64,000 nucleotides of DNA from Rebecca billardiae RCC1528 (GCA_965240325.2 OZ251238.1:1116001-1180000); one strand, 5' to 3'. Positions 19,102-62,249 are shown, counted from the stretch's first letter. Translations and numbers: made by a program. The notes: a model not told the origin generated them from the sequence alone.

Positions 19102-21032
19102 GCACGCGCAGGACTCTGGCCCGCGTGCCGCGTGGCCCGCGTACCCTGACCGAGACAGCAGGCGCAGCCCTGTTACACGGCATCAAGTCCATCAATGATC
19201 AAGCCGTATAGTAACCGTAGGTCAGTATTAGTTGAGCACTTACATCAAGGCCAAAGCAGCCTGCGCCACATTACACTTAACTCACTAGCTACAGGCAATC
19301 GCGGGCAATAAGAAGTCAGAGATCTCACGACGGCTAGCCTCGGTTTCTTAGCCGTTCGGTAGCCCGAGCGCCTACGGAGTCTCAGTTTGAGCAGACAACT
19401 ATATATATATATATAGTGGTAATAACGGGGCCGCATCCGCGGCGGAGACGCCACGAGCACGCGGACACCAGACGGCGCCGCTGGCGGGCTGGCTCAGGCT
19501 GAGCCCCAGTGAACTGTGCTGACTCGTCGGAGACCGACGGTGGGACTGAGACTCAGAGATCGATCTGTCAAAAACTCTGTTCGCCGCCTGGCTCAGGCGA
19601 AGATCGGGGGCGGCGGGGCGGGCCGGGGACATCCCGCAGCGCGCCACGCTCGCCAGTAAGAGGTGGACGTCGTCGGGAGTGAGCGCGCCGCCGGTGCGGG
19701 CAGCTGACTGAATCGCAGACACTTGCGTGACGCGTCCATCGGGTCGGGGGCAGACACGGGGAGCGGCGGGCGCGGGGCAGGTTCGCGCCGGCGTGCGCGA
19801 GCGAGTGGGAGTCCATCGCCCGGGAGGCACGCCGGTCGTTATCCCCGGCCGCACGCAGGCGCCATCCCCGCACTGCCGCCCCACACGGCGGAGCAGGCTG
19901 CTAGTAGTTCGATGCCGCCGCCGCATTGGCTGGCAAACGCGCCGTACCCGGCCCAGTAGGCCTCGAGCTTCTCGCTCTCGAGTGGGGGGTCCCAGCAGAC
20001 GGTATTGGTGTCCATACCATGGGCCGACTCGTCGTCGACGGCGGCCAGACCAGCCTGCGGCTGCAGCACAGGCGAGCACAGCTGCGTCGGCGGCGTGTGG
20101 TAGCCCGATTTCCGAGGTGCGAGGGTGCGCTGGCGCTTTGTGCCGAGCTCGGGGCTCGGCTCGGCGGTGTCCTCAGACGTGTTTGATGAGCTCACGTTGT
20201 CATCCGCGACCGCTCCGGGTCGCATGTCGCGTACGGCCGGCATCTCGCGGCGACGAAGGGCTTAGCGGCGTCCAGGGACGAGCGCGACGTCGATGCGTCG
20301 CAATGCAAGGCACGCCCTCAGCAAAGGTTGGGGTGCCGCAATGTTCAGTGTGTGGAGGGTACTGCCGATTGGCGTTGGCAGAGTTTGGGTGTGTGCTTGA
20401 CGCCGCAATCGGCGGACGCAAAGTGGGTATATGTCTGAGCGACCTCTTTTAGACACGTCAACTCATCAACGCATCGCACCGTGATTTCCTAAAAAGTTTC
20501 ATCGATGACCAACGAATCGCAGCCTGACCTACCCAACTGTGAGTTTCAGCCCGTCTCGCTTTCAGGGTGTCCAGGGACAGCGGTATGCTCAGAATCCCAA
20601 CCACTTCAGGGCCAAATTGTCCTAGGACTTCTTGTCTGAGTACCACCCCGCTCAACAAGTCAGTGATGTGGAGATCCCCAGCACCACTCTCAGGCCGTCA
20701 GAGTACCGTGGTGTGTCCTTGATTTGTGGTTGAAGCAGTACTCAGAATCCCAACAGTCCGCGCTTATGATACTTAAAAGGCGGTTCCTCGCGCTCATCAA
20801 CCGCTCACCAACTTGAGTACCTGACGTGATTCACTCGATGAATATTCGTCGCCATTGATCTGCAAATGCAGGCACGATGATTAATAAGCAAAAAGTGGCG
20901 CCGGCGGGGTAATTCCACGTTTGGGAAGAGCTTGAACCGGGCGCGCGGTTACCGACTGACGGAAATTAGCAGTGGCAAAATGATGAGTGAAAATGATTTG
21001 AAGGCCGTCAAGTGTCAGAATGATACAGTTTA

Positions 21033-21658
21033 TTACCGATTTCAGGCACCCGTGGAAGTCAATCACGATTCACTTTGACCCTCTTCGATCGTGCCGATTA
21101 GATCGATCGAGATCGATCGTGTTTGTGGATCACGAGTTCGATCGCGAATCGATCTGCCGATCCGAACCCGATCACAACTCACGTTCAATCGACATCGATC
21201 GGCAAAGCGGGTGCGTTCGATCGTGATCGATCATCTACTCCGATTCACAAACGATCGTGATCGATCGCAATCGATCACGAAGAAGCAAATCGATGGCTCG
21301 CCTTTTGTGATGACTGATACCAGCTAAATCGGTCGCAATTTTGTAAGTGATACATAGGCGTCATGATGAGGTATCGATCGATTCGTTGAATGTGTTTCGT
21401 AAATCGATCGTTTCGATCTCAAACGCGATCGATCCCAATCAATCGAGGTTCGCCGATCGATCGAGATCAAATCAGAATCACGAGCTGTTCAACTCAGTTC
21501 GGATCGAGATTGGATCGGCGAACTGATCTGGCCAATCACAATCGATCACAACCCACCCACTTCGATCGCGATCGATTCGGATGAAGGACCAAAGCAGAAC
21601 TGATCCGACTTGATTCTGACTTCGACGATTGACTTCCACGGGTGCCTGAAATCGGTAA
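21033..21658. mobile_element. 626-bp non-autonomous DNA transposon (MITE) with perfect 32-bp TIRs and TA target-site duplication
   Basis: TTACCGATTTCAGGCACCCGTGGAAGTCAATC at 21033-21064 is the exact reverse complement of 21627-21658; TA on both sides; no credible ORF inside. Confidence 0.9.
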
Positions 21659-21960
21659 TACTAAGAATAATAAGAGACGCACACAGCTCTGACTGGCAGG
21701 CGAGATACAGTTTACTAAGAACAAGCGGTCCTTGTTCCTTGTTCGCCGCATGATCGGCAATGCCAATGTAATATATGACGATGTAGTATGTTATGCCCAC
21801 TGCTACGCAGTCACCAGATCGGCGACGTCGTCGACAGTTGGGATACCTCCAAGTGGAGGCCCGAGTGGTTGCAGCCCACTGTGCCACCAGGGTACTTGCG
21901 GCTGCGACGTGTTTGCAGCACAAGAATAAGAGACGCACACAGCTCAGGCAGGCGAGATTG
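21659..21960 (-). mobile_element. Cluster of arms of the small palindromic MITE family
   Basis: TAAGAGACGCACACAGCTC...GGCAGGCGAGAT at 21661-21706 and 21922-21960, plus ACAGTTTACTAAGAA at about 21707-21721. Confidence 0.75.
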
Positions 21961-22981
21961 GGAAAAGAAATAAATCGACCCGCCTCCGGCGGACTCACCA
22001 CCATCCGGCTACCATCCCCGACGCCAGGCATGCTTCGCTTTAGCGTGCGCAATCGGCTCAGGCAGTCAGGCGACGATCTCAGGTCTCAGGAGTCAGGACA
22101 CTGGACAGCCGGAGACTCAGCGACGGTGCAGGCTGGAGCTAGCTAGTAGCTGACCCGCGGGCCGCATGACGGTCCACTCGGTCGGAGTGGCTATTATGAG
22201 TGGCTGCGGCGCTGCGACGCCAGCGCTTCCCGAACCGTTGCGGACCCTCGTCCATGCGCACCATGCGTTGCGCAGCGTGTTCTGGCGTTTGTTCGCGTCG
22301 GAGGAATGAAGTGCTGCGCCGTGCCGAGAATGCAAAGCCGCCAAAGCGTGGGCTGTCACGCGCAGTCCGAGGACCCCCGGTCTAGTCGTCGTCATTGTTT
22401 TCAGTGTGCCGTGCAACCGCTCACGACCAACCCATGCGCGCCCAAGTGCCGAGCCCGAGCCCGAGCCGCACGGCGCATGCGCGGGCACGCCGTCTCGGAT
22501 CGCGCCTTCGCGCGGCACACCGCGCTGTCGTCGAGCTGTCCTGCGAGGCCGGGCCGGCAGGCACGCGCATTCGCGATGGCAGGAGTGAAGCGCACGGCAC
22601 TGGAGCCAGCCACGCATTTGTGTGCGACGACCGCATCAGCCGACACCCCAAGGAGTGCCGCCGCTTGTCAACGCAAAATGCCAACGCGCGCGCGGCGCGT
22701 CGCTGCACGCTGGCGCCGAGCCCCCGGGCGCTCGGTCTTCGAAGCCGCACGCAGCCGAGCGCTCTTCTGAAACACCCACTGATATCGACCTCTCCAAGCT
22801 GCCTTTCGCTCCCACACCGGCACCGGTCGCTCCCTCGCCCTGCACGACAGCCCTTCTCATCACTGTTGTCATTGACCGAGTTGGGCGGGACGGTAGGTCA
22901 GACCGCCATCGTGCGGCGTCGCCGACCGAGGCGAGCGGTTGGCGCGCTCACCGACGTCGCCCGCGGGCGCACACGCGCGCC

Positions 22982-43990: not shown

Positions 43991-44400
43991 CGTCGCGGAC
44001 CATGATGATCCGCGACGAGCGCGGAGGCGGACCGGGCGGCGCAGACCGCGGCGGATTGGCGTCGGCGGCCCGGCGGACGGCGCCACGGCGGACCGGCGGT
44101 GACGGCGGATACCGCGGACAATATCATCCGTCCGCGGCCCGATCGGCCGCCGAGTAGTCCCCGCCGACGAGCACTGCTCACGGACTGTCGGACACCGGAG
44201 TGTCAGGCTCTGGCTCCGGTTGATGCGACCCCTGCCAGTCCGGTCCGATAGAATTAGACGAAACCGGGCGTACCGAAAATAAGGATCTTCGCATTCCTGC
44301 GGCCGAATGAACGCCCGAAGTGTCCCACAGGGCCCCAAGTAGGGTTGCTATGGATGGCCAATAAGTGCCCAGGGTGTGAAACTCGTCAGTTTGTGACTAC

Positions 44401-44567
44401 TTCAGACTCTATAAGACGTACTCTATTTTCATAGCTAGCTATTTACCCAGTCCGGTGACACATTTCCAATAGCTACGGGTGCATCCGGATCGCTTGACCC
44501 GGACCGTGTTCTGGCCAGAGTCTGAAATGGGTAAATACATAGTAAAAATAGAGTCTGAACTATAGAG
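44401..44567. repeat. Degenerate AT-rich inverted repeat (possible old foldback MITE)
   Basis: TTCAGACTCTAT (44401) pairs with ATAGAGTCTGAA (44548); TATTTACCCA (44440) pairs with TGGGTAAATA (44528). Confidence 0.55.
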
Positions 44568-45439
44568 GATTTAAAAGTGCTTATGTTGGCCCAATATCGC
44601 TCGTCTGAAGTCATCATCTAGGCATCCATTGAGGTCCTCCTGTGCAGTTTTCACGAGTGACTTCATGAAGGAGCTCACAGACAGTGCCCGTCTCTGGCAG
44701 GGGTCAACCGAAGCCTCAAGCCAGAGCCATCAGCCATCGTCATGATCATCACTCTCCGGGCATTGACGTTCACTGGCCCATGCTGCCAGTGCCACTCACG
44801 TCAGTATTGAGTATAGTCGTCACGGATTGTAAAATAACGGCGGCGACGGTATAGTCAGCCGCGAACTCGTATAGATCATCAGCATCAGATTCAGACTAAA
44901 TCAGATGAGTACTCTGAGTAGTCCGACGATCTGAGTACGTCCATAATGGACGAATGGTACCGTCGCCATGCGACTGCTGCGCAGTATAACTACTATATAT
45001 ATATATGTATGTCAATATATATATATATATATACTCTACTATTGTGCTTGTCCGATGCTGCCACGTCGTTAAATATATACTACACTCAATCTCATTCAAT
45101 GATTTAACGACACAGGTAGGACGACGCGGGTCTCCTGATTCGTCGGCGGCAGTGCCCGATTACTCAGAAGTAACCGAAGTAGCAGCTTGAGGCTGCTTTA
45201 GCGCAAGCTTGTAAGTAGGCTCCGCTTACGCCTAGCTACGAGTCGGCTACGACGGCTAATATACCACTATCAGTATAGCTGCCGTGTCTAAGTGAGTTGA
45301 GCAGCACGGCATCAGCAGCGCGCATACGGCGCGCGCCTTTACATACGGCGACAGCCACAGGCGGTCTGAGACTACAGAGTACAGACTCACGCACCGGAAG
45401 CCTTAGCCCGTGGCCCCGTGCTGTCTGCTGACGGACCGC

Positions 45440-45620
<181 letters not shown>

Positions 45621-45897
45621 CAGCAGTTATATCGTCATCAATTATAGCAGGCGCAGCCGGCGCAGCAGTACTAAGTCTGTGGCTTAAGTAAGTTCGTACT
45701 AGCAGCAGCAGCAGTCAAATAATACACAGCACCGGACGCTCCCCATGCTGAGGCATGCTCGGGCACCATCGATCATGAGTCTGCTGATGACTACGACGGA
45801 GCCCGCGGGGCGCGGCCGGCCGCCCGCGGCCCGGTGCCGCGGGTGCGCGTTGCAGCGCGCGGCGCGGCGGGCGCCTCATGCCCTCATGCTGCCAGGC

Positions 45898-47919
45898 TCA
45901 GACGAAGAGGAGGCGCTTCCACCTGCAGTACAGGATGATGAGGACGAAGACGACGGCCGAGGCCGCCGCGCCCGTGGACACCACCGTCCAGAAGTACTCC
46001 GGCCCGGGCGCGTCCTTCCCCTCCGGCAGCTCGTCGTCGGGCACGAACTGGATATTCATGCCGAACACGGCGCCGACCGCCGCGTACACGCCGATGCACA
46101 GCGCGCCAATGGTGAGCAGCAGCTCGAGCTGGATGAGCTGGTTGCGGTGCGCGTCGAGCTCGATGTTGACGTAGTCCTCCGCGTTCTCCATGTACTCCCG
46201 CAGCTCGTCCAGCTTCTTCGCCGCGCCGTCGAGCTGCTCGAAGTACGTCTCGACCATGTTCTCGAGGACTTCCACCGCCTCGCGGTCGAGCAGCTCGTAC
46301 GAAGATTTGCGAAGCATCTCGGCGGGGCTGAGCATGGGCGAGGCGCGCGCGGAGTTGAGCGAGGTGCGCGAGGTGGAGGTGCGCGGGCCGAGGCCGCCGC
46401 CGCCGCCGCTGCCCCCGTCCATCTCGAGCTCCTTCTCCATCTGCGCCTTCCGCTTGCGCGTGAGGCACATGTCGAGCAGCTCCATGTCGTTGTCGAGAAG
46501 CTTCTCGAGCTCGTCGTGCACATTCTCAACCTTCTTGTCCAGCCGCGCGAGGGCGGTCTTCATCTTGCGCGCGGTCTCGAGGTGGAGGCGCGAGACGCCG
46601 TGGGTCAGCCGGTCGAAGATCGGCGTGGCGGCGAGCACCAGCGCGTCCACCTCCGAGCACAGCTTGTCGATCACCTCGACGAGGCACGTCTCGAGCGCGC
46701 GCAGCTCAAACGGGACGGGTGTCTCCGGCTCCGCGATCGGGAGCGGCGGCGGCGGCGGCGGCTCGGGGACGCTCGCGGGCGCGGCGGCGGCGGCGGCGGC
46801 GGCGGGCTCGGTCGCCGGGATGCCGGCGGCCGCGGCGCTCCCCACGCTGCCGCCTATCATGCCGCCGGCGGCGGCGCCGGCGACGCCGGCGGCGGCGCCG
46901 GCGACGCCGGCGACACGGCCAATCAGCGGCTGTGAGCCCGCGCGCCCCGGCTTGCGCAGTCTGAATCCCGGCCCGGAGCTGCCGCCCTTGTCGGGCTTGT
47001 CGGGCTTGTCGGGCTTGTCGTGCGGCGGCTTGGGCTGGGCGCCGTGCTTCGAGTCGTGCCCGTGCGCGCCGCCCTTCTTCTGCTGCAGCGCCGGCGGCAG
47101 CTGCGGGATGATACCGTCGATGCCGCGGCCGGACGGCGTCGTGCGCGGCTTGGGAGCGTAGCCGTCGGTCGTGCGCGAGTGGAGCGCCTGCAGCATCGCC
47201 TGCACGGCGAGGGGCATGGGCTTGTTCGCCTCGGCGGGGTTGGGCCCGCGGCGCATGCGCGACTCCAGCTTCGACGAGAAGTTGAGGAACGACGGCGTGT
47301 CGTGCATCAGGATCAGCATGAAGTCGGCCGTGATGATCGCCTTCACATACTCCATGTTGACAACGAGCGCGCGCTCGCGGATCATGATGGACGACGGGTA
47401 CGCGAGCGTGGGGTCCATCACGCGCAGGTCGCGCGGGGGCACGCCGGTGAGCCGGCGAACCTGGTGCTTGTCGATCACCGCCTCTCGCCGCCCGCCAAAG
47501 TCGTCGAAGCAGATCCACGACATCGGGCGCGACTTGGCGCGGCGCGAGTGCACGGTCGGCAGCAGCGCGGTGTTCTCCTTGAACACGTCGAAGTCGGCGG
47601 GCGGGGGCGCGGCGAAGTTGGCGCCGCGCATGCTCTCTTCCGCGTGAGGCGCGTCCCGCCCCGTGCCGCCGCGCGACTCCATCGCCTCCTCGTACTCAAC
47701 ATACTCACGTTGCTCCGTGTAATCCGCATAGGATGCTGCGTACGATCTGTCCGAGCTGCCGTCCTCGTCGTCCGGCCGGGGGTCGCGGCCCGGCGAGGGC
47801 GGCACGTGCGGGGAGATATCCACGAGCGCCAGCCCGCCGGACGCGGAGGGGTGCTGCTCGCCCCCCTCCATCGCCTCGTCCTGTACCCGGTCGTACGAAG
47901 CCGACTTTCCGATCTCCAT
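45898..47919 (-). CDS. MRS2: MRS2/CorA-family magnesium transporter
   Basis: RDLRVMDP..YPSSIMIRERALVVNMEYVKAIITAD, PFELRALE, EDYVNIELDAHRNQLIQLEL, GMN motif (AVFGMN) between two C-terminal TMs. Confidence 0.92.
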   Translation of the reverse strand: MEIGKSASYDRVQDEAMEGGEQHPSASGGLALVDISPHVPPSPGRDPRPDDEDGSSDRSYAASYADYTEQREYVEYEEAMESRGGTGRDAPHAEESMRGANFAAPPPADFDVFKENTALLPTVHSRRAKSRPMSWICFDDFGGRREAVIDKHQVRRLTGVPPRDLRVMDPTLAYPSSIMIRERALVVNMEYVKAIITADFMLILMHDTPSFLNFSSKLESRMRRGPNPAEANKPMPLAVQAMLQALHSRTTDGYAPKPRTTPSGRGIDGIIPQLPPALQQKKGGAHGHDSKHGAQPKPPHDKPDKPDKPDKGGSSGPGFRLRKPGRAGSQPLIGRVAGVAGAAAGVAGAAAGGMIGGSVGSAAAAGIPATEPAAAAAAAAPASVPEPPPPPPLPIAEPETPVPFELRALETCLVEVIDKLCSEVDALVLAATPIFDRLTHGVSRLHLETARKMKTALARLDKKVENVHDELEKLLDNDMELLDMCLTRKRKAQMEKELEMDGGSGGGGGLGPRTSTSRTSLNSARASPMLSPAEMLRKSSYELLDREAVEVLENMVETYFEQLDGAAKKLDELREYMENAEDYVNIELDAHRNQLIQLELLLTIGALCIGVYAAVGAVFGMNIQFVPDDELPEGKDAPGPEYFWTVVSTGAAASAVVFVLIILYCRWKRLLFV

Positions 47920-55494: not shown

Positions 55495-56383
55495 TCACGC
55501 CGCCGCCTCGGCCCTCGCCTGCTCGGCGTCCCACGCGACAACGCTCTCATACGCAAGCTTGCCCCCGAAGATATCGAGCGCCGAGCCGATCGTCACGTCC
55601 ACCTTGCCGCCGCCGAGCGCCCGCACGCGCTCCACGTCGTCCAGGTCGCGGCAGCCGCCCGCGTACGTGACAGGGATCGGCGACCACTCGCCGAGGCAGT
55701 GGACGAGGTCCTCCTCGATGCCGCAGCCCATGCCCTCCACGTCGACCCCGTGCACGAGGAACTCCGCGCACGAGCGCGCGAGCTCCTCCAGCGCTTCGCG
55801 TGTGACCGCCGTGTCCGTGAACCGCTGCCACTTGTCCATCACTACGTGGAACGGGCCGCTCGGGTCTTCGGGCCGGCGGCGGCAGCTGAGGTCGAGGACG
55901 ATGTGCTCGCGGCCTGGCGCGCGTGGAGAGCGGGGGTGGGGTGTGAGAGGCCGGCGGCGCCTCGCCGGGCGCACCGGCCCGCCGGCTCCGACAGCGGCGC
56001 GCGCGCGCACCGACGGCTGCGACCAGCTCCGCAAGTCGCTCCCTGTTCAGCTTGCCGTCCACGAAGACCCACGAGGTGACGATGACGTGCGACGCGCCCG
56101 CGTCGATGTACCTCTTCGCATTGCCCGCGTTCACCCCGCCGCCCACCTGCAGCCCGCCCGGGTACGCTGCGAGCGCCGAGAGCGCCGCCTCCTCGTTGCC
56201 CGGGCCAAGCATGATGACGTGGCCGCCGACCAGCTTGTCGCGCTGGTACATGCTCGCAAACTCCGCGGCGGACTTGGTCGTCTCGAAGTTGGTGCGCAGC
56301 TGCGACGGGTCAGTGCTCAGTGTCGAGCCGACGATCTGCTTCACCGCGCCGGCATGCAGGTCGATGCACGGCCGGAAGCGCAT
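55495..56383 (-). CDS. HIS6: Phosphoribosylformimino-AICAR-P isomerase (His6/HISN3 type); intron 56010-55914
   Basis: [75 protein letters not shown]. Confidence 0.95.
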
Positions 56384-56741
56384 GGCCACGTCGATGCGGC
56401 TGGACGCGGCGCTCGGCGCTCCGGCCTTCGCCGCTCGGTCAGCTTTTTTTGGCTGGCACGATGGCGGACGCCTTGAGCCTACGTGCAGCCTGCCTTGTGG
56501 CAATGTCAGCGGTGGGCCATGACAACGACGAGAAGGAGCGCGGCACGAGACACCTCCTTGTCACGCAGGTAGCTTACGAGTACGTTCGTACACACACGAC
56601 GAGCGGTTTCTCACCGCGCCGGCGGCCGAGCAGCGGACGCGCGGGCCGGGCACCCGTGACAATGCCAGTTCGGACGACGTCATTGGCACTGCCATTGCGG
56701 CGTCTTCGAGAAGCCCGCGTCGCCGCGCGGCACGCCCGATG

Positions 56742-59700
56742 CTATTCGGAGCTCTCCCCAGCCGAGGCGCCGTTGAGGTCGTTACGGTCGCGCACCTCGG
56801 AAAGCTGCCGGGAGCACATAGCGCCGCGGCGCGCGCGCGGGGTGGATCGGCGCGTCGTCATCGCGTCGTCGGCATGCGCGCGCGTGGCGCAGGCAAAGTT
56901 GGCGGGCGCCGCGCGGCCGCGCCGCGCGCGCACCTCGAGCGTCCGCCTGTTGTTCAGCTCCTCCAGCTCGATGAAGTACTCGTCCAGTCCCGGCGTCTTA
57001 GCGGACGACTCGAACTCGAGCATCGTTCGCAGCCGGAGGAAGAGCCATTCGTTGAACGCTCGCTCGTTCACTTCTTCGAACGTGGAGTTGAGGACGGCGA
57101 TGAGGAGGTTGAGGAGGACGAAGACGGTGAGGGCGGTGTTCGACCAGAAGAGGCCGAAGCCGAGCACCCGGCGCACGCCGCTCAGCGGCTCGAGGAACTC
57201 AAAGTCAATTTCGCCCAGCACCCACAGCACCATCTGCGTCACGATCTCGAGATAGCTTTCGGCGGGCACCTCGCCGTCTGCGACCGCGGGTGAGGAGTTG
57301 TACAGGACGTAGATGGCGTTGGCGAAGCCGAGGAGGACGAAGGCGTACACGCCGAAGAACTGCACGATGTTGCGGATCATCCCGCCCACCGTCACGAGCA
57401 GCGGGCCCAGAGGGCGGTACAGCGACACGTACTGCAACATGCGCAGCGCGAGCGCAAGCTGCAGGAACGACGACAACGGCACGAGCGCGTCCGCGACCGC
57501 GGCGGCGGCGGCGGCGTCGGCCGGGCTCTGCTGCGCGGCGAGCAGCGAGATCGCCGTCGTCGGGATCAGCACGCTCGGCACGGCGATCAGCGTGAACGCG
57601 TCCACCACGTTCCTGCCGAACGGGCAGCCGAGCGAAGCGCGCGAGCGCGCGCGGTGGCGCGGCGCGGCGTCGAGAGCGCGGCCGCAGCGCGCATGAGCGG
57701 CGCGGCGCGCCACCGGGCGCGCGCGGTGGCGGGCGCACCAGAAGGACGCGTAGTGCCTGATCAGGTTCCACCGCGAGTCCACGCGCAGCTCGTCCACCTC
57801 GACGCGCAGGAAGAAGAGCCAGCTGTACAGCCCGCCGCCTGCGAGCGCGTAGTAGCCGGCGCGCACCGCCGCGGCCGCGGCCGTCTCGGGCAGCCACCGA
57901 GCACCGAGCCGCGCGGCCACGTCCGCAGAGCCGGGCTCGAGCACGGGCGCGATGGAGTGCGTGAAGCAGCAGAGCACCATCAGCCCGTACAGCAGCACGC
58001 GCTCCTGGTACACGTACCGCGCGAACCACTTCCACTTGCGCTGCGCGCGCGCGGCGGCGCGGCGCGGCGCGCGGCGCGCGCGCGCGCGTGCGCGTGTCGG
58101 CGCGCGCGGTGCGCGCGCGCGCAGCGCGCAGAGTGGCGTCGCGCCCAACCTCAAGCAGCGTGCGCATGATCGGCACGTTGAGCAGCTCCTTCCGCTCGCA
58201 CGCCACCACCAGCTGCTCGAGCGTGCACGCCTCGCCCGCGCCGTCTGCGAACGTGAGCGCAGAGCTCCCGTTGGTCGGCAGGACGACACCGTCGAAGGAG
58301 TAGCTGCGCGCGCCGTGCGCGCGCGCGGCCCAGGCAGGTGGGCAGGGGGCGCGGGCGTGCGCAGCCGCGGCAGGCGGGCGGGTGCGGATGGGGGAAGGGC
58401 GGGGGCAGGGTCGGTCGGGGCGCGGCACGGCGGCGCGGCGCGCAAGCGGGCACGGGCGCGCACGCGCGCGGCGCGCGCGGCGCCACGCACCGGTAGAGGT
58501 CATACCCGTACCAGTAGTACTCAAAATTGGCCTTCTGCTGTAGCAACGTCACGGCAATCGCCGGCAGGCGCTCGACTGCGAGCGAGAGCGGCGAGCGGCC
58601 GTGGTCGTTGCGCGCGAAGCCGTCGACGCCGCGGCCGAGGAGGAACTTGGCGCACTCGAGGTCGCGCGACGCGCCGAGCAGCACGTGCAGCGCGTTGTTC
58701 CCCTCCGCGTCCGTCGCGTGCAGCAGCGAGGGCGGCGCGTGCGCCTCGAGGAAGCGGATCACCTTCAAGTTGCCATTGAACGCGGCCGCGTGCACAAGCG
58801 TCCAGCGCGGCTCTGACTGCAGCAGCCAGAACGAGGTGGCGGCGAGGTCGGCGCCGTGCTCGTGGAGCAGCGCGAGCGCGTCGACGTCGCCCTCGAAGCA
58901 CGCGTGCACCGCCGGGCGCGGCCAGTACTCACGTGGGTAGTTCGGGTCCGCCACGCCCTTGCTCAGCGCCTCCCGGATGAGTGCATAGCGCTCCGAGTCG
59001 GACACGCCAACCATGAAGGGCTCCAGACTGCCCTCGTCCGGGCGGACGAGGAGCGCGAGGGGCGAGCGGCACCAGCCCTCGAAGAAGCGGAGGCCGCCGA
59101 CCTGCCGCGCGGGCGGGAAGACGAAGTCCCAGCTGAAGTCCATGTGCGAGCGCACCTCCTTCACGTTGCCCGCGCGGATCGCCTCGAGCAGCGCCGCCTT
59201 CTTGGAAGTGAGCGTGTCGCCCAAGTAGTCGGCCGGGAAGCGCCGGCCGTTACCCACGTATAGCAGCTTGAAGTAACGGTATTGGCGCGACTGCGCCTCG
59301 AGCACGCCCGCCGCGGAGACGAACACGTCCGGCTCGCCCGCGCCGCGCACGAGGTACTCCTCGATCTCGCGCACCTCCGCCGCCTCCGCCTCGGTGAGAG
59401 AGCGGCCGTCGCGCCGCAGCAGCGCGGAGGGCTCACCCTCCCGGGCGCGCGCGCCGGCCGCGGCCGCGCGCGCGCCGCGCAGCAGCAGGCCGCGCCACCG
59501 CCGCCAGCCGGCGGCCGAGCCGCCGTCTGCGCCGCGCGCCGCGCCGCGCGCCGCGCCACCGCGCCCGCCGCGCGCCGCGCGCCGCTTCGCCGCCGCCGCC
59601 TCCGCCACCGCCGCGTGCTGCTGCTCCGCCGTCTCCAGCAATTCCAGACCAGCGAGCACTTGGATTAATTCCATCTGCTCGGCGACTGCGAGCCGCGAGT

Positions 59701-59816
59701 AGGCGGGCGGCGCGGGCACGCCGTCGTCGGCGCTCGAGCCCGGCGCGCGCGCGTCGGACCACGGGAGCAGCCGCTGCGCGCGCGTGCGCGGCTTGCCCTC
59801 CGCGCCGCCGCCATCC

Positions 59817-59859
<43 letters not shown>

Positions 59860-60817
59860 CATCTGAGACGTAAGTTGCCGTCAGAAGCAGCTGGCGCAGC
59901 TCGGAGGGCGAGAGCCGCGAGTCGAGGTCGAGGTCGGCGGAGGCGATGAGCATCCGCGCGTCGTCGATCGTCGGCACGTCCTCCGCCGCCGCCGCCGCCG
60001 CCGCCTCGCTACTGCCGCCGCCGCCGCCGTCCGCGTCGCGCCGCGCGGCCTCGGACATCGCGGAGCGGATCTCCGGCGGCGCGCAGCGCTGCAGCACGCC
60101 GAGGAGCTCCTGCGCGGAGATCGTGTCGTCCATGTCGTCGTCGCACACGTCGAACATCTCGCGCCACGTCAGCCCGCGCGCAGCCGCCAGCCGCCCCACG
60201 CGCGCGAGCGCGCGCAGCGCAGCCGGCCGCACGCGCTCGCGCGCGCGCTCGGTGAGCGCGCAGTCGCGCGCGGCAAAGGCGTCGGCCTCGACGTCGGCGG
60301 CGAGCTGCTTGAACGCCGGGAAGCGGATGAGCTGGTCGTCGTCGAGCATGTGCCGCAGCACCGACGCCTCGGGCGGCACGAAGCTCTCGCTCACCGTCGA
60401 GCGCAGCCGGTCGACCGCGGTGACGAGGCCGGCGAGACCGAGCGCGTCCGAGTTGGTCGTCGGATCCCGGCAGGAGTCAAAGATGGCGCGGAGGCGGCGC
60501 TCGCGCTGGAGGCGCAGGACGGTGCGCCTCGCGCCCGAGAGCACGCCAAGCACCGACGACGGCGCCGCGAGCTGCGCACGCTCGGCCGCCGCGCCGACGC
60601 CCGCCGAGCCCGCGGCGGGCGCATCGGCGCGCGGCGGACCGTCCATCGCGCGCGCGCGCGCGCGCCGCGGGCCGAGCGCCGGTCGCCTCACGCGCGCGAC
60701 TGGCCGGCCGGCGTGCGCGCGCGCCGCCGGCGGGAGCGCCAGCGCGCGCACGCCGACGGGCGCCGTGAGCGCCGCGACGAGCGCGGCGAGCGCGAGCGCT
60801 GCGCGGCGCGTCGGCAT
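56742..60817 (-). CDS. TRP-family cation channel with EF-hands and ankyrin repeats; introns 58490-58304, 58149-58041, 57738-57613 and probably 56933-56805
   Basis: EF loops DDDMDDTISAQE and DLDLDSRLSPSE; four ankyrin-like repeats; spliced LLE/RKWKWF, FW/NVVD, LGPLLVTVGGMIRNIVQF, LGEIDF pore, VLLNLLIAVLNSTFEEV...NEWLFLRLRTMLEFE (S6 + TRP helix). Confidence 0.88.
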
Positions 60818-60971
60818 GGCCGGCACCCCCGCTCCCGGCTTTCCCGCTCGCGTCGTCGGCGCTCGGGCGCGATGGCGGACGCGCGCGAGCGGACGGTCGG
60901 GCGGGTGGTGAAAAGTGAAAACACGCCAACGCCCGCCGTCGCGTCTCCCCTCGCCGCGCGTCCGCCGCCCG

Positions 60972-62249
60972 ATGACGCGAAGCGTCGGCGCCATCCCCGC
61001 GCTCGTGGCGCTCGCGGCGCTCCTCTCCTGCCTGCCCGCGGGCCCCGCGCTCGCCACCGCCGCGGACGCCGCGCGTCCCCCGCCGATGCCCTCCGCAAAG
61101 CCGGCGGCGCGCGCGCCACACGCCCGCGGCCCCTTCCGTCGGTTCCTCCTTGGCTCGCTGCCGGCGATCGGGTACGCCGGGCTCGCGGGCAGCAGCCTCG
61201 CCGCGGGCGTGCTGCTCGCGCCCGTGCTCTCGAGCTCGGGCAGCGTCGCGCTCATCGGCACGTGCGTCGTCGCGCCCGCCGCCTCTCTGGCCGTGCAGCT
61301 TCTTGGCGCGTCGGGCGGCAGCGTCGCGCGCCGCATGGGCGGCGTGCCCGCGGACGCGCGGCTCGTGGAGCTGGCGCACGAGGCGGCGGCGGCGGTGGGC
61401 GTGCCCAGCCCGGCGGAGGTGTACCTGCTGCCCGCGCGCGAGCCCAACGCCTTCGCCGCCGGCCGGCCCGGCCGCACCGCCGTCGCGGTCACGAAGGGCC
61501 TCGTGGAGAGCCTCTCAGAGCGCGAGCTCCAGGCAGTTCTGGCGCACGAGATGGGGCACCTGAAGCGGCGCGACGTGGGGCGCAACATGCACGTGGCCGT
61601 CGCGCTCGCCGGCCTCGGCGGGCTCTGGCGCGCCGGACGGCGCGTCTCGCACTCCGCGCGGCAGGGCGCGCAGCAGGCGGCGGCCGCGGCCGCCGAGGCG
61701 GCCGCGGCCGTCGAGCGCGCGAAGGCAGGAGGGCTGGGGCGGAGGGCGCAGGCGGAGGCGGAGCGCGCGGCGGCGGAGCTGGAGGAGCGCGCGGCGGCGG
61801 CGGCGCGCAACGCGGACGGCCTGCGCGCGCTCGGGTACGCGCTCTGCCTCGTCGGCGCCGCCACGCAGGCGGTCGGCCAACTGCTAGGCCTCGGCGCGAG
61901 CCGCGCGGCCGAACTCGAGGCGGATGCGGAGGCGGCGCGCGCGTTCGGCGCGGAGGCGATGGCGTCGGCGCTGGGCAAGATCGAGGGGCGCGGCGCGGAG
62001 TACGACGACCTGCGCGCGACGGGGCTGGGCGCGAGCCTCGCGCACTGCATGCTGAGCAACGGCCCGCGCGCGCGCCGCCGCGCCGCGCCGCGCGCCGACG
62101 GCGAGGGCGCGCCGGCGCCGCGCAGCGACGGCGGCGGCGGGAGCGGCGGCGGCGGGCTCGGCGGTTGGCTGGAGCGCGCGCAGCGGCTGACGCGGACGCA
62201 CCCGCCCTTCGAGGTGCGCATCGCGTCGCTGCGCGCGGCCGGGCGCTGA
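60972..62249 (+). CDS. M48-family (HtpX-like) membrane zinc metalloprotease
   Basis: EPNAFAAG, AVAVTKGLV, ELQAVLAHEMGH (HExxH), ELEAD, THPPFEVRI; N-terminal signal peptide. Confidence 0.88.
   Translation: MTRSVGAIPALVALAALLSCLPAGPALATAADAARPPPMPSAKPAARAPHARGPFRRFLLGSLPAIGYAGLAGSSLAAGVLLAPVLSSSGSVALIGTCVVAPAASLAVQLLGASGGSVARRMGGVPADARLVELAHEAAAAVGVPSPAEVYLLPAREPNAFAAGRPGRTAVAVTKGLVESLSERELQAVLAHEMGHLKRRDVGRNMHVAVALAGLGGLWRAGRRVSHSARQGAQQAAAAAAEAAAAVERAKAGGLGRRAQAEAERAAAELEERAAAAARNADGLRALGYALCLVGAATQAVGQLLGLGASRAAELEADAEAARAFGAEAMASALGKIEGRGAEYDDLRATGLGASLAHCMLSNGPRARRRAAPRADGEGAPAPRSDGGGGSGGGGLGGWLERAQRLTRTHPPFEVRIASLRAAGR

What the first reader, a model, noticed from the sequence alone, without database searches (positions are those of the whole stretch)
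56742..60817. TRP channel with EF-hands, ankyrins and a plastid-type bipartite presequence
Seen: after splicing, one polypeptide reads signal peptide (MPTRRAALALAALVAALTAPVGVRA), an Arg/Ala/Pro-rich acid-free transit-like stretch (LALPPAARAHAGRPVARVRRPALGPRRARARA), two canonical EF-hand loops plus two degenerate ones, ankyrin repeats, and a 6-TM TRPV/TRPA-like pore with TRP helix. Known: TRP channels normally have cytosolic N-termini without cleavable signal peptides, and signal+transit presequences route proteins into complex plastids. Inference: this may be a Ca2+-sensing cation channel of a plastid membrane, an architecture and location I do not recognise as described.
Basis: partly seen in the sequence, partly recalled or inferred. 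Interest (0 to 1): 0.85.

Follow-up and report, generated by a model that had tools for sequence, protein, structure and literature searches.

The report
Algal TRP channel with plastid-type presequence
This is an intact gene for a calcium-sensor-bearing TRP-type cation channel that starts with a signal peptide plus transit-like stretch, seen across most of its algal relatives, so it is a candidate for a TRP channel inside a complex plastid, but its location has not been tested.

Summary
On the minus strand, five GT-AG exons (60817-58491, 58303-58150, 58040-57739, 57612-56934, 56804-56742) give one 1174-aa protein. In order it has a hydrophobic signal-like N-terminus, a 32-aa acid-free Arg/Ala/Pro stretch, EF-hand-like sites, ankyrin repeats, six TM helices with a pore loop, and a TRP helix. 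Homologues confirm every splice junction.

The EF-hand + ankyrin + TRP architecture is a conserved, undescribed family. It occurs in a pelagophyte genome, in Emiliania huxleyi (without detectable EF-hands), and in many marine metagenome and metatranscriptome contigs.

The new result concerns the presequence. Its sequence is not conserved, but its type recurs: 11 of 15 family N-termini pass a lenient post-hoc rule, against 5 of 85 other TRP/ankyrin proteins and 20 of 498 six-frame ATG-ORFs of this window. The window protein meets the published ASAFind criteria by hand (L at +1, uncharged first three residues, no acidic residue in the first 15).

Plastid routing is therefore the best reading, at about 0.5. 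It remains in silico only: no RNA run was listed, no predictor could be run, and no localisation exists. In this protein the EF-hands are partly degenerate. Precedents exist: Chlamydomonas TRP2 is predicted chloroplastic, and a diatom EF-hand K+ channel is plastid-predicted. I class it as a new variant of a known kind.

The parts
56742..60817 (-). Whole CDS: 5 exons (60817-58491, 58303-58150, 58040-57739, 57612-56934, 56804-56742), 1174 aa
   Evidence: GT-AG splice model in frame. All junctions match homologues. GC3 is 0.93-0.95 along the exons, while the introns are flat.
60743..60817 (-). Signal-peptide-like segment, aa 1-25: n-region MPTRR, an 18-aa uncharged A/L/V h-region, and VRA before the putative cleavage site
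   Evidence: Sequence. Mean Kyte-Doolittle hydropathy 2.73 over the best 9-aa window. It is the first ATG downstream of the divergent neighbour, with G at -3. GC3 0.95 against GC2 0.75.
60647..60742 (-). Transit-peptide-like stretch, aa 26-57: starts L-A-L, has 9 Arg and no Asp/Glu
   Evidence: It meets the ASAFind +1 L, uncharged first three and acid-free first 15 criteria (PMC12136025).
60290..60493 (-). Degenerate EF-hand-like pair, aa 109-176; the region is conserved in relatives P0185 and P0186
   Evidence: BLASTP to the EF1-EF2 pair of P0024: 28% identity, E 0.026. Relatives at 44-46% identity.
59900..60142 (-). EF-hand pair with consensus loops at aa 226-237 and 295-306, split by a Gly/Ala low-complexity insert (aa 261-282)
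   Evidence: Pfam EF-hand_1 at 21.5 bits (below cut-off). EF-hand_7 spans aa 218-310. The first loop is conserved in L005; the second is not.
59804..59863 (-). (GGC)n run that encodes a poly-Gly tract, aa 319-338
   Evidence: Sequence; coordinates.
58303..59305 (-). Conserved linker plus ankyrin-repeat domain, aa 505-776 (runs over intron 1)
   Evidence: Pfam Ank families 5.8e-11 to 3.4e-8 for Ank, Ank_2, Ank_4 and Ank_5. It is 46-58% identical to about 33 homologues.
57801..57998 (-). Transmembrane helices S1 and S2 (exon 3)
   Evidence: Hydrophobic segments aligned with homologues; coordinates.
57078..57608 (-). S3 to S6 with pore helix and filter LWVLGEID (exon 4)
   Evidence: Ion_trans 2.4e-11. 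TRPC4 2.4e-11. Closest relatives are 73-79% identical over this part.
57012..57053 (-). TRP helix (NEWLFLRLRTMLEF)
   Evidence: Aligned to the TRPC4 TRP box EWKFAR. E-W-L and R are nearly invariant in the family.
60818..60974 (.). 157-bp intergenic spacer shared with the divergent M48 peptidase gene; no ATG in any frame on the minus strand
   Evidence: Sequence. M48 gene identified.

Best explanation
This is an expressed-looking, intact nuclear gene of a GC-rich alga, pelagophyte-like by its relatives. It encodes a TRP channel of the ankyrin-bearing TRPC/TRPV/TRPA type, with an EF-hand domain fused to its N-terminus. Shown: the domain order, the splice model, and that this architecture defines a conserved family. 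Inferred: the first 25 residues act as an ER signal peptide cleaved after VRA. The next ~32 acid-free, Arg-rich residues, which start with Leu, would then act as a transit peptide, so together they form a bipartite plastid-targeting sequence. The precursor would enter the ER-continuous outermost plastid membrane, cross the inner membranes, and insert from the stromal side into the inner envelope or thylakoid membrane (or stop at an intermediate membrane). This would leave the EF-hand/ankyrin domain in the stroma, the topological equivalent of the cytosolic face of ordinary TRP channels. There it would form a tetrameric cation channel. The acidic pore residues (GEID) suggest Ca2+ permeability, and Ca2+ binding to the EF-hand domain would modulate gating. 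Which plastid membrane it occupies, its ion selectivity, and Ca2+ binding by this partly degenerate EF domain are all untested.
For: The architecture and splice model are supported.

The family keeps EF-hand + Ank + Ion_trans in single ORFs and transcripts.

Signal-like N-termini followed by [small]|L/F/W and an acid-free basic stretch recur despite no sequence conservation:
- window: VRA|LALPP
- P0186: ASM|LAPLAP, followed by 43 acid-free residues
- P0024 (Pelagophyceae sp. CCMP2097): ALA|LAPLQG
- P0017: TSG|FFFAG
- P0027: SAG|WFAPP
- L011: TLA|LTPKPP
- L010: VAA|LVPW

The lenient rule passes 11 of 15 family members, against 5 of 85 other TRP/ankyrin proteins and 20 of 498 six-frame ORFs of this window. 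The strict rule passes 5 of 498.

N-termini are complete by an upstream in-frame stop in P0006, P0016 and P0186. P0185 has no downstream ATG before the conserved domain, and P0186 has only M23, which lies inside the presequence.

Residues 1-58 are acid-free, against 13.5% D+E in the rest of exon 1. The coding-type GC3 signal starts at 60817. No ATG lies between the neighbouring gene and 60817.

The ASAFind criteria (+1 F/Y/W/L, first 3 uncharged, first 15 acid-free) are met by hand.

In the AF2 model of homologue P0016, residues 1-70 are disordered while the EF, ANK and TM parts fold.

A cleaved signal peptide without onward plastid import would put EF-hand and ankyrin domains in the ER lumen. 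That topology is not known for TRP channels (established knowledge).

Bipartite presequences of the same style occur on multi-pass membrane proteins predicted to be plastid transporters in Phaeodactylum, for example J43171 AWS|LASP.
Against: There is no transcript evidence: none was listed. SignalP, TargetP, ASAFind and HECTAR were not available, so the cleavage site is my own reading, and the enrichment rule was written after seeing the sequences.

The +1 residue is Leu in most members rather than the canonical Phe. Leu next to Ala is common in any hydrophobic segment.

Some members fit poorly: P0033 (E. huxleyi) has acidic residues within 6 aa of the junction, P0016 has a weak h-region, and P0003 has none.

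No tool named the organism, so the presence of a complex plastid is inferred from relatives.

Surveys of stramenopile TRP channels treat them as plasma-membrane channels (PMC11085791). No plastid proteome or transporter atlas that I read lists a TRP.
Confidence: 0.5

Rival explanations
1. The hydrophobic N-terminus is an uncleaved membrane anchor, an extra seventh helix with its N-terminus outside. The EF-hand/ankyrin domain then stays in the cytosol, and the channel sits in the plasma membrane or an endomembrane with ordinary TRP topology.
For: The hydrophobic segment is 18-19 uncharged residues long. The many Arg residues just after it could hold the following domain on the cytosolic side under the positive-inside rule (established knowledge). 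This would keep the normal TRP orientation, and stramenopile TRPs are assumed to be plasma-membrane channels.
Against: The segment is Ala-rich and short for an anchor. The N-flank is itself positive (MPTRR; MEPRRR in P0186), as in cleaved signal peptides. In several relatives the segment is only 9-13 residues long (P0006, P0027, P0185), too short to span a membrane. A -3/-1 small-residue site followed by L/F/W recurs. The AF2 model of a homologue does not pack the N-terminus against the channel; residues 1-70 are below pLDDT 50.
Confidence: 0.15
2. Only the signal peptide is functional. The protein stays in the secretory system (ER, vacuole or cell surface) with its EF-hand/ankyrin domain in the lumen or outside the cell, and the Arg-rich stretch is compositional filler.
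For: The signal-like N-terminus is conserved. The genome is about 70-80% GC here, which favours Ala, Arg, Pro and Gly in any poorly constrained segment. Lumenal EF-hand proteins exist (established knowledge).
Against: The acid-free basic stretch also occurs in lower-GC relatives: P0017 at GC 0.55 and L011 at 0.58. The rest of exon 1 is 13.5% acidic under the same composition. Ankyrin domains and the gating face of a TRP channel in the lumen are not known.
Confidence: 0.13
3. Translation starts at the second Met (M58, 60646). The upstream 57 codons are 5' UTR that happens to be open in a GC-rich genome, so this is an ordinary TRP channel with a cytosolic N-terminus.
For: Long spurious ORFs are common here: the frame stays open up to 62221. 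No RNA data were available to place the transcript start.
Against: 60817 is the first ATG after the divergent neighbour, and no upstream ATG exists in any frame. GC3 is 0.95 against GC2 0.75 in codons 1-56, like the rest of the CDS and unlike the flanking spacer or the introns. In P0185 the presequence-bearing ATG is the only candidate before the conserved domain; in P0186 the only other one (M23) lies inside the presequence. The pattern occurs in only 1-4% of random ATG-ORFs of the window.
Confidence: 0.1
4. The presequence is a mitochondrial or dual targeting peptide, and the channel sits in a mitochondrial membrane.
For: The N-terminus is rich in Arg, Ala and Leu and free of acidic residues. 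Some relatives (P0005 MLASAVALMANSRMPRRTRSVARH, P0185) look as much like mitochondrial presequences as signal peptides.
Against: The window protein, P0186, P0024 and P0017 have long uncharged hydrophobic cores typical of signal peptides rather than amphipathic helices with regularly spaced Arg.
Confidence: 0.07

Closest known systems
Animal group-1 TRP channels with N-terminal ankyrin repeats (TRPC4/5, TRPV3/5, Nanchung-Inactive, TRPA1)
   Same: Six TM helices, a pore loop between S5 and S6, a TRP helix with a conserved E-W..R motif, and ankyrin repeats before the membrane domain. Sequence hits reach 2.4e-11. The fold of a family member matches at Foldseek E about 1e-10 over 540-750 columns.
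   Different: Only 14-18% identity. It has an N-terminal EF-hand domain of up to four hands, whereas calmodulin is a separate subunit in TRPV and Nanchung-Inactive. It has an N-terminal signal-plus-transit-like presequence. It belongs to none of the animal subfamilies.
Chlamydomonas reinhardtii TRP2 (Cre16.g655950), predicted chloroplast TRP channel (Christensen et al. 2020, as reviewed in PMC8318260)
   Same: A TRP-family channel of an alga proposed, by prediction only, to sit in the plastid and to shape plastid Ca2+ signalling.
   Different: It is from a green alga with a primary plastid, so a simple transit peptide suffices rather than signal plus transit. No relationship to this family was tested here, because no tool gave access to the sequence. 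No EF-hand/ankyrin N-terminal architecture is reported in the review.
Phaeodactylum Phatr3_J43171, plastid-predicted ion channel with EF-hand motif (PMC9546453)
   Same: An ochrophyte channel with EF-hands and a bipartite presequence of the same style (…GAWS|LASP… followed by an acid-free basic stretch). It has a sporadic distribution in photosynthetic stramenopiles and haptophytes.
   Different: It is a two-pore K+ channel (TVGYGD / TIGFGD filters) with C-terminal EF-hands. It is not a TRP channel and is unrelated in sequence.
Ochrophyte Tic20 with N-terminal EF-hand domain (PMC5462543; PMC6720183)
   Same: A precedent for an EF-hand domain fused N-terminally to a multi-pass plastid envelope protein in the same algal group.
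   Different: It is a protein-import component, not a channel of the TRP family.
Yeast vacuolar TRP channel YVC1/TRPY1
   Same: Precomputed Pfam hits to YVC1_C (PF23317) on most family members. Both are organellar, Ca2+-modulated TRP channels.
   Different: YVC1 has no ankyrin repeats, EF-hands or presequence. The hit did not appear in my own Pfam scans.

Membership tests
TRP channel superfamily (ankyrin-bearing group 1 type) | Six-TM voltage-gated-like fold with a pore loop between S5 and S6 | tested here: met
   Ion_trans 2.4e-11 and PKD_channel 3.4e-7 on exon 4. Six hydrophobic helices align with homologues. The homologue model matches TRPV/TRPC/TRPA structures.
TRP channel superfamily (ankyrin-bearing group 1 type) | TRP helix / TRP box immediately after S6 | tested here: met
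   NEWLFLRLR aligns with the TRPC4 TRP box EWKFAR. E934, W935, L936 and R939 are nearly invariant in the family.
TRP channel superfamily (ankyrin-bearing group 1 type) | N-terminal ankyrin repeat domain | tested here: met
   Ank_4 5.8e-11, Ank_2 2.2e-10 and Ank 3.4e-8, all above the curated cut-offs.
TRP channel superfamily (ankyrin-bearing group 1 type) | Tetrameric cation-conducting channel | not testable with these tools
   Needs electrophysiology or cryo-EM.
EF-hand Ca2+-binding domain | Helix-loop-helix with a 12-residue DxDxDx6E loop, in pairs, scoring above the family threshold | tested here: inconclusive
   Two loops fit the consensus (aa 226-237, 295-306). However, EF-hand_1 scores 21.5 bits against a 25.4 cut-off, and EF-hand_7 scores 17.2 against 30. 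Homologues pass clearly at 1e-12 to 1e-20. The second loop is not conserved in the nearest relative.
Bipartite plastid-targeting sequence of algae with red complex plastids (ASAFAP type) | N-terminal ER signal peptide with a -3/-1 small-residue cleavage site | tested here: inconclusive
   By hand the n-region MPTRR, an 18-aa h-region and V-R-A before the site all fit. SignalP was not available.
Bipartite plastid-targeting sequence of algae with red complex plastids (ASAFAP type) | F, Y, W or L at +1 of the transit peptide | tested here: met
   Leu at +1 for the VRA|LAL site. The criterion is taken from PMC12136025. L, F or W also occupies +1 in most relatives. This is conditional on my choice of cleavage site.
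Bipartite plastid-targeting sequence of algae with red complex plastids (ASAFAP type) | First 3 transit-peptide residues uncharged, first 15 nearly free of acidic residues, net positive charge | tested here: met
   LALPPAARAHAGRPV: no D/E, 2 Arg and 1 His. The whole stretch aa 26-57 has 9 Arg and 0 D/E.
Bipartite plastid-targeting sequence of algae with red complex plastids (ASAFAP type) | Host organism has a four-membrane red-derived plastid, and the presequence drives import | not testable with these tools
   No tool named the organism. The nearest named relatives are Pelagophyceae sp. CCMP2097 and E. huxleyi. Import needs GFP fusion or proteomics.
YVC1/TRPY-type fungal vacuolar TRP | Match to the YVC1_C domain | tested here: inconclusive
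   Precomputed PF23317 hits on homologues, but no such hit in my own scans of the window exons or of four homologues.

The most novel reading that the evidence does not exclude
A whole family of EF-hand-ankyrin-TRP channels resides in a membrane of the complex plastid of pelagophytes, haptophytes and related marine algae. If so, TRP channels were recruited as plastid Ca2+/cation channels, and these would be concrete candidates for the unidentified route of stromal Ca2+ fluxes in secondary plastids.
Probability: 0.45. Interest if true: 0.8.

Novelty: new variant of a known kind. Interest (0 to 1): 0.62.

Why it matters
The channels that move Ca2+ and other cations across plastid membranes are poorly known. 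In algae with four-membrane plastids, which carry out a large share of marine photosynthesis, they are essentially unknown. TRP channels are regarded as plasma-membrane, ciliary or vacuolar sensors with cytosolic N-termini.

A conserved TRP family with its own EF-hand sensor and a plastid-type presequence would give a testable molecular candidate for Ca2+-regulated ion flux in these plastids. It would also be a second, independent case of a plastid TRP, after the predicted Chlamydomonas TRP2. The family is abundant in ocean metagenomes and metatranscriptomes, so its expression could be followed in the field.

If localisation fails, the gene is still a new TRP subfamily with fused EF-hands.

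Tried and rejected
1. A whole-exon-1 word search found nothing, because low-complexity Ala/Gly words swamped the candidates. Restricting the search to the ankyrin part and to aa 88-262 worked.

2. RNA evidence: no run could be listed for 56600-61100, so read laying was never used. None was listed, which is not proof that none exists.

3. Organism identity: an exact look-up of the neighbouring M48 protein found no record, and cluster look-ups gave no organism names.

4. Phatr3_J43171, the 'ion channel with EF-hand' among predicted diatom plastid transporters, looked like a possible orthologue. Its sequence shows a two-pore K+ channel, so I rejected it.

5. Pfam's pair model and BLASTP show that the correspondence of EF sites between this protein and distant homologues is ambiguous, so I make no claim about which hands were lost.

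6. 'Short' family members without EF-hands or presequence (P0007, P0013, P0018) seemed to argue against conservation. Their contigs show that the gene caller chose a downstream ATG or split the gene.

7. The N-terminus of the contig of the closest relative (L009, 73-77% identical in the membrane part) could not be read, because the contig starts inside exon 1.

8. The earlier scan notes nearby concern other genes and did not bear on this one.
Full report
**Observation**

The window is about 70% GC overall and 75-80% GC around the finding. I read the minus strand of 56400-61400. From the ATG at 60817, an open frame runs 775 codons to a GT at 58490. Four GT-AG introns (58490-58304, 58149-58041, 57738-57613, 56933-56805) then join exons 58303-58150, 58040-57739, 57612-56934 and 56804-56742. 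The result is one 3525-nt CDS of 1174 aa ending at TAG 56744-56742.

Introns 3 and 4 are 126 and 129 nt long, multiples of three, and free of stops, so splicing could not be assumed. Homologues settle it:
- P0005, P0017 and P0049 read …SVW|NALD… across junction 3.
- P0041 and P0054 read …NNRRTVE(I/L)S… across junction 4.
- Junctions 1 and 2 (YDLYR|YSFDG, TLLE|RKWKW) match every full-length homologue.

GC3 is 0.93-0.95 in all exon segments, with GC2 much lower. The introns and the upstream spacer are flat. The gene is therefore real and intact.

**Domains**

Pfam finds ankyrin repeats at aa 638-764 of exon 1 (Ank_4 5.8e-11, Ank_2 2.2e-10) and Ion_trans (2.4e-11) plus PKD_channel (3.4e-7) on exon 4. 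Against PDB sequences, exon 4 hits TRPC4 (2.4e-11), TRPC5/6/3, TRPV3 and a TRPM2-like channel. Its NEWLFLR aligns with the TRP box EWKFAR.

I built an AlphaFold model of the intronless homologue P0016 from a 20-sequence family alignment (mean pLDDT 72.6). It matches Nanchung-Inactive, TRPV5/3/4, TRPC4/5 and TRPA1 at Foldseek E about 1e-10 over 540-750 columns. Identity is 14-18% and TM-scores are modest. This is a TRP channel of the ankyrin-bearing kind, outside the animal subfamilies.

- Loop DDDMDDTISAQE (aa 226-237) scores 21.5 bits, below Pfam's 25.4 cut-off.
- The pair model EF-hand_7 spans aa 218-310, pairing that loop with DLDLDSRLSPSE (aa 295-306) across a Gly/Ala insert.
- An upstream pair (aa 109-176) is degenerate.
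- In the nearest relative with this region (L005), the first loop is kept (DDDVDDAISAKE) but the second is not.

Distant homologues have clear EF-hand pairs at 1e-12 to 1e-20.

**Family**

The ankyrin part finds about 33 proteins at 46-58% identity. Many carry EF-hand + Ank + Ion_trans. The two with organism names are Pelagophyceae sp. CCMP2097 (P0024, assembly GCA_026770575.1) and Emiliania huxleyi (P0033), whose model shows no EF-hand. The rest come from marine metagenomes and metatranscriptomes.

An exhaustive search with exon 4 gave 12 representatives below 1e-30 and 36 below 1e-10. Fragments 73-79% identical come from closer relatives, and beyond these the hits are generic TRP channels. 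The whole architecture lies in single ORFs or transcripts in L001, L002 and L003, so the EF-hand region is not a separate gene.

I found no paper that describes this family. Surveys of diatom and brown-algal channels treat TRPs as plasma-membrane sensors.

**Presequence**

The quoted strings are present. Residues 1-25 consist of MPTRR, an 18-residue uncharged Ala/Leu/Val core, and V-R-A. Residues 26-57 start L-A-L and contain 9 Arg and no Asp or Glu. The first 58 residues are the longest acid-free run outside the membrane domain, although the rest of exon 1 is 13.5% D+E under the same base composition.

60817 is the first ATG downstream of the divergent M48 peptidase gene, whose own ATG is at 60975. 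The 157-bp spacer holds no ATG in any frame, and position -3 is G. Codons 1-56 already show the coding signature, with GC3 0.95 against GC2 0.75.

The pattern is rare among ATG-initiated open stretches in the six frames of this window: 5 of 498 by a strict rule and 20 of 498 by a lenient one. It is therefore not a by-product of GC richness.

**Conservation of the presequence type**

This is the main new result. The last protein search recovered N-terminal fragments of two closer relatives (44-46% identical over aa 88-262):
- P0186 begins MEPRRRSAGAAWSVLLLAVPASM|LAPLAP…, followed by 43 acid-free Ser/Arg/Pro-rich residues.
- P0185 begins (MVRPRTGW)MLSALLACPVSTLRGA|LPGRRLSFQ….

P0185 has no other in-frame ATG before the conserved domain. 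P0186 has only M23, which lies inside the presequence.

More distant members show the same pattern:
- P0024: …CCATAALA|LAPLQG
- P0017: MRPVFFFFLVVVVRTSG|FFFAG
- P0027/28: MIVACASAG|WFAPP
- P0006: MFSLAIINAVSALRA|SWKAP

Upstream in-frame stops confirm complete N-termini for P0006, P0016 and P0186.

Three 'short' members seemed to lack both EF-hands and a presequence, but they are gene-calling artefacts:
- The L010 ORF is open upstream, and its first ATG gives MSAIVALLLSTPVAA|LVPW.
- L012 has MLLAPRCVLWLHAGTAAA|LSLS upstream.
- L011 carries an overlapping EF-hand ORF that starts MIAAALYTITLA|LTPKPP.

I applied one lenient rule to all sets: an uncharged hydrophobic 9-mer near the start, then [AGSCTM] followed by [FWYL], then 15 residues with no acid and at least one base. 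I wrote the rule after seeing the sequences, so the contrast is indicative rather than a calibrated test.

The published ASAFind criteria are F/Y/W/L at +1, uncharged first three residues, and a first 15 almost devoid of acidic residues. Periplastidial proteins lack the +1 residue and carry mixed charges (PMC12136025). The window protein meets these criteria if cleavage is after VRA.

**Interpretation**

A conserved cleavable signal peptide on a TRP channel would place the EF-hand/ankyrin gating domain in the ER lumen unless the protein travels on. Import through the remaining plastid membranes, with insertion from the stromal side, restores the usual orientation, with the stroma in place of the cytosol. 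Bipartite presequences of the same style sit on multi-pass membrane proteins predicted as diatom plastid transporters, for example J43171 …GAWS|LASP….

I therefore take plastid routing as the best single explanation, at about 0.5. The rivals are:
- an uncleaved N-terminal anchor with normal topology (0.15);
- a signal peptide only, with the N-terminal domain in the lumen (0.13);
- initiation at M58 (0.10);
- mitochondrial targeting (0.07).

Which plastid membrane, the ion selectivity (pore LWVLGEID; the Glu after Gly is specific to this clade), and Ca2+ binding by this partly degenerate EF domain are all inferred.

**Limits**

No RNA run was listed, so transcript start and splicing rest on homology and composition. 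No targeting predictor was available. No tool named the organism: the exact look-up of the neighbouring protein found no record, and cluster look-ups gave no names. Some members fit poorly, namely P0033, P0016 and P0003.

**Novelty**

Three precedents exist:
- Chlamydomonas TRP2 is predicted to be chloroplastic and is linked to low-CO2 acclimation (PMC8318260).
- Phaeodactylum J43171 is a plastid-predicted channel with EF-hands, but its sequence shows a two-pore K+ channel.
- Ochrophyte Tic20 carries an N-terminal EF-hand (PMC5462543).

None of these is a TRP with fused EF-hands and a signal-plus-transit presequence. I class the finding as a new variant of a known kind, with moderately high interest that depends on a localisation experiment.

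Noticed in passing
window 60975-62249 (+): A divergent neighbour gene encodes a Peptidase_M48 protein (Pfam 1.6e-30). Its own N-terminus is hydrophobic and signal-like (MTRSVGAIPALVALAALLSCLPAGPALA…), followed by a Pro/Ala/Arg-rich stretch. The two start codons are only 157 bp apart, which suggests a shared bidirectional promoter. No exact copy of this protein is on record in the assembly collection.
   Followed up: partly
window 57613-57738 and 56805-56933 (-): Introns 3 and 4 are 126 and 129 nt long, multiples of three, and stop-free. Database proteins of close relatives (P0045, P0061, P0200, P0042) read straight through the equivalent introns, so public predictions for this family contain retained-intron artefacts.
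   Followed up: yes
L004:5001-6214 and L005:253-1965: In a close relative an extra intron (about 180 nt) interrupts the first consensus EF-hand right after …LTWREMFDM. The window gene has no intron there, which indicates intron gain or loss within the clade.
   Followed up: partly
window 59804-59863 and 59972-60037 (-): A (GGC)n microsatellite encodes a run of 14 Gly, and a Gly/Ala insert splits the EF-hand pair. These coding low-complexity expansions are absent from distant homologues and may vary in length between strains.
   Followed up: no
window ~55500-56383 (-) and L004:152-1261: A spliced His_biosynth (HisA/His6-like) gene lies just downstream of the channel gene. In a relative's contig a His_biosynth gene lies about 4 kb from the channel's 5' end, which suggests partial, rearranged synteny.
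   Followed up: no
window 20001-22000 and 44001-46000: Two patches drop to about 52-53% GC in an otherwise 63-80% GC window.
   Followed up: no
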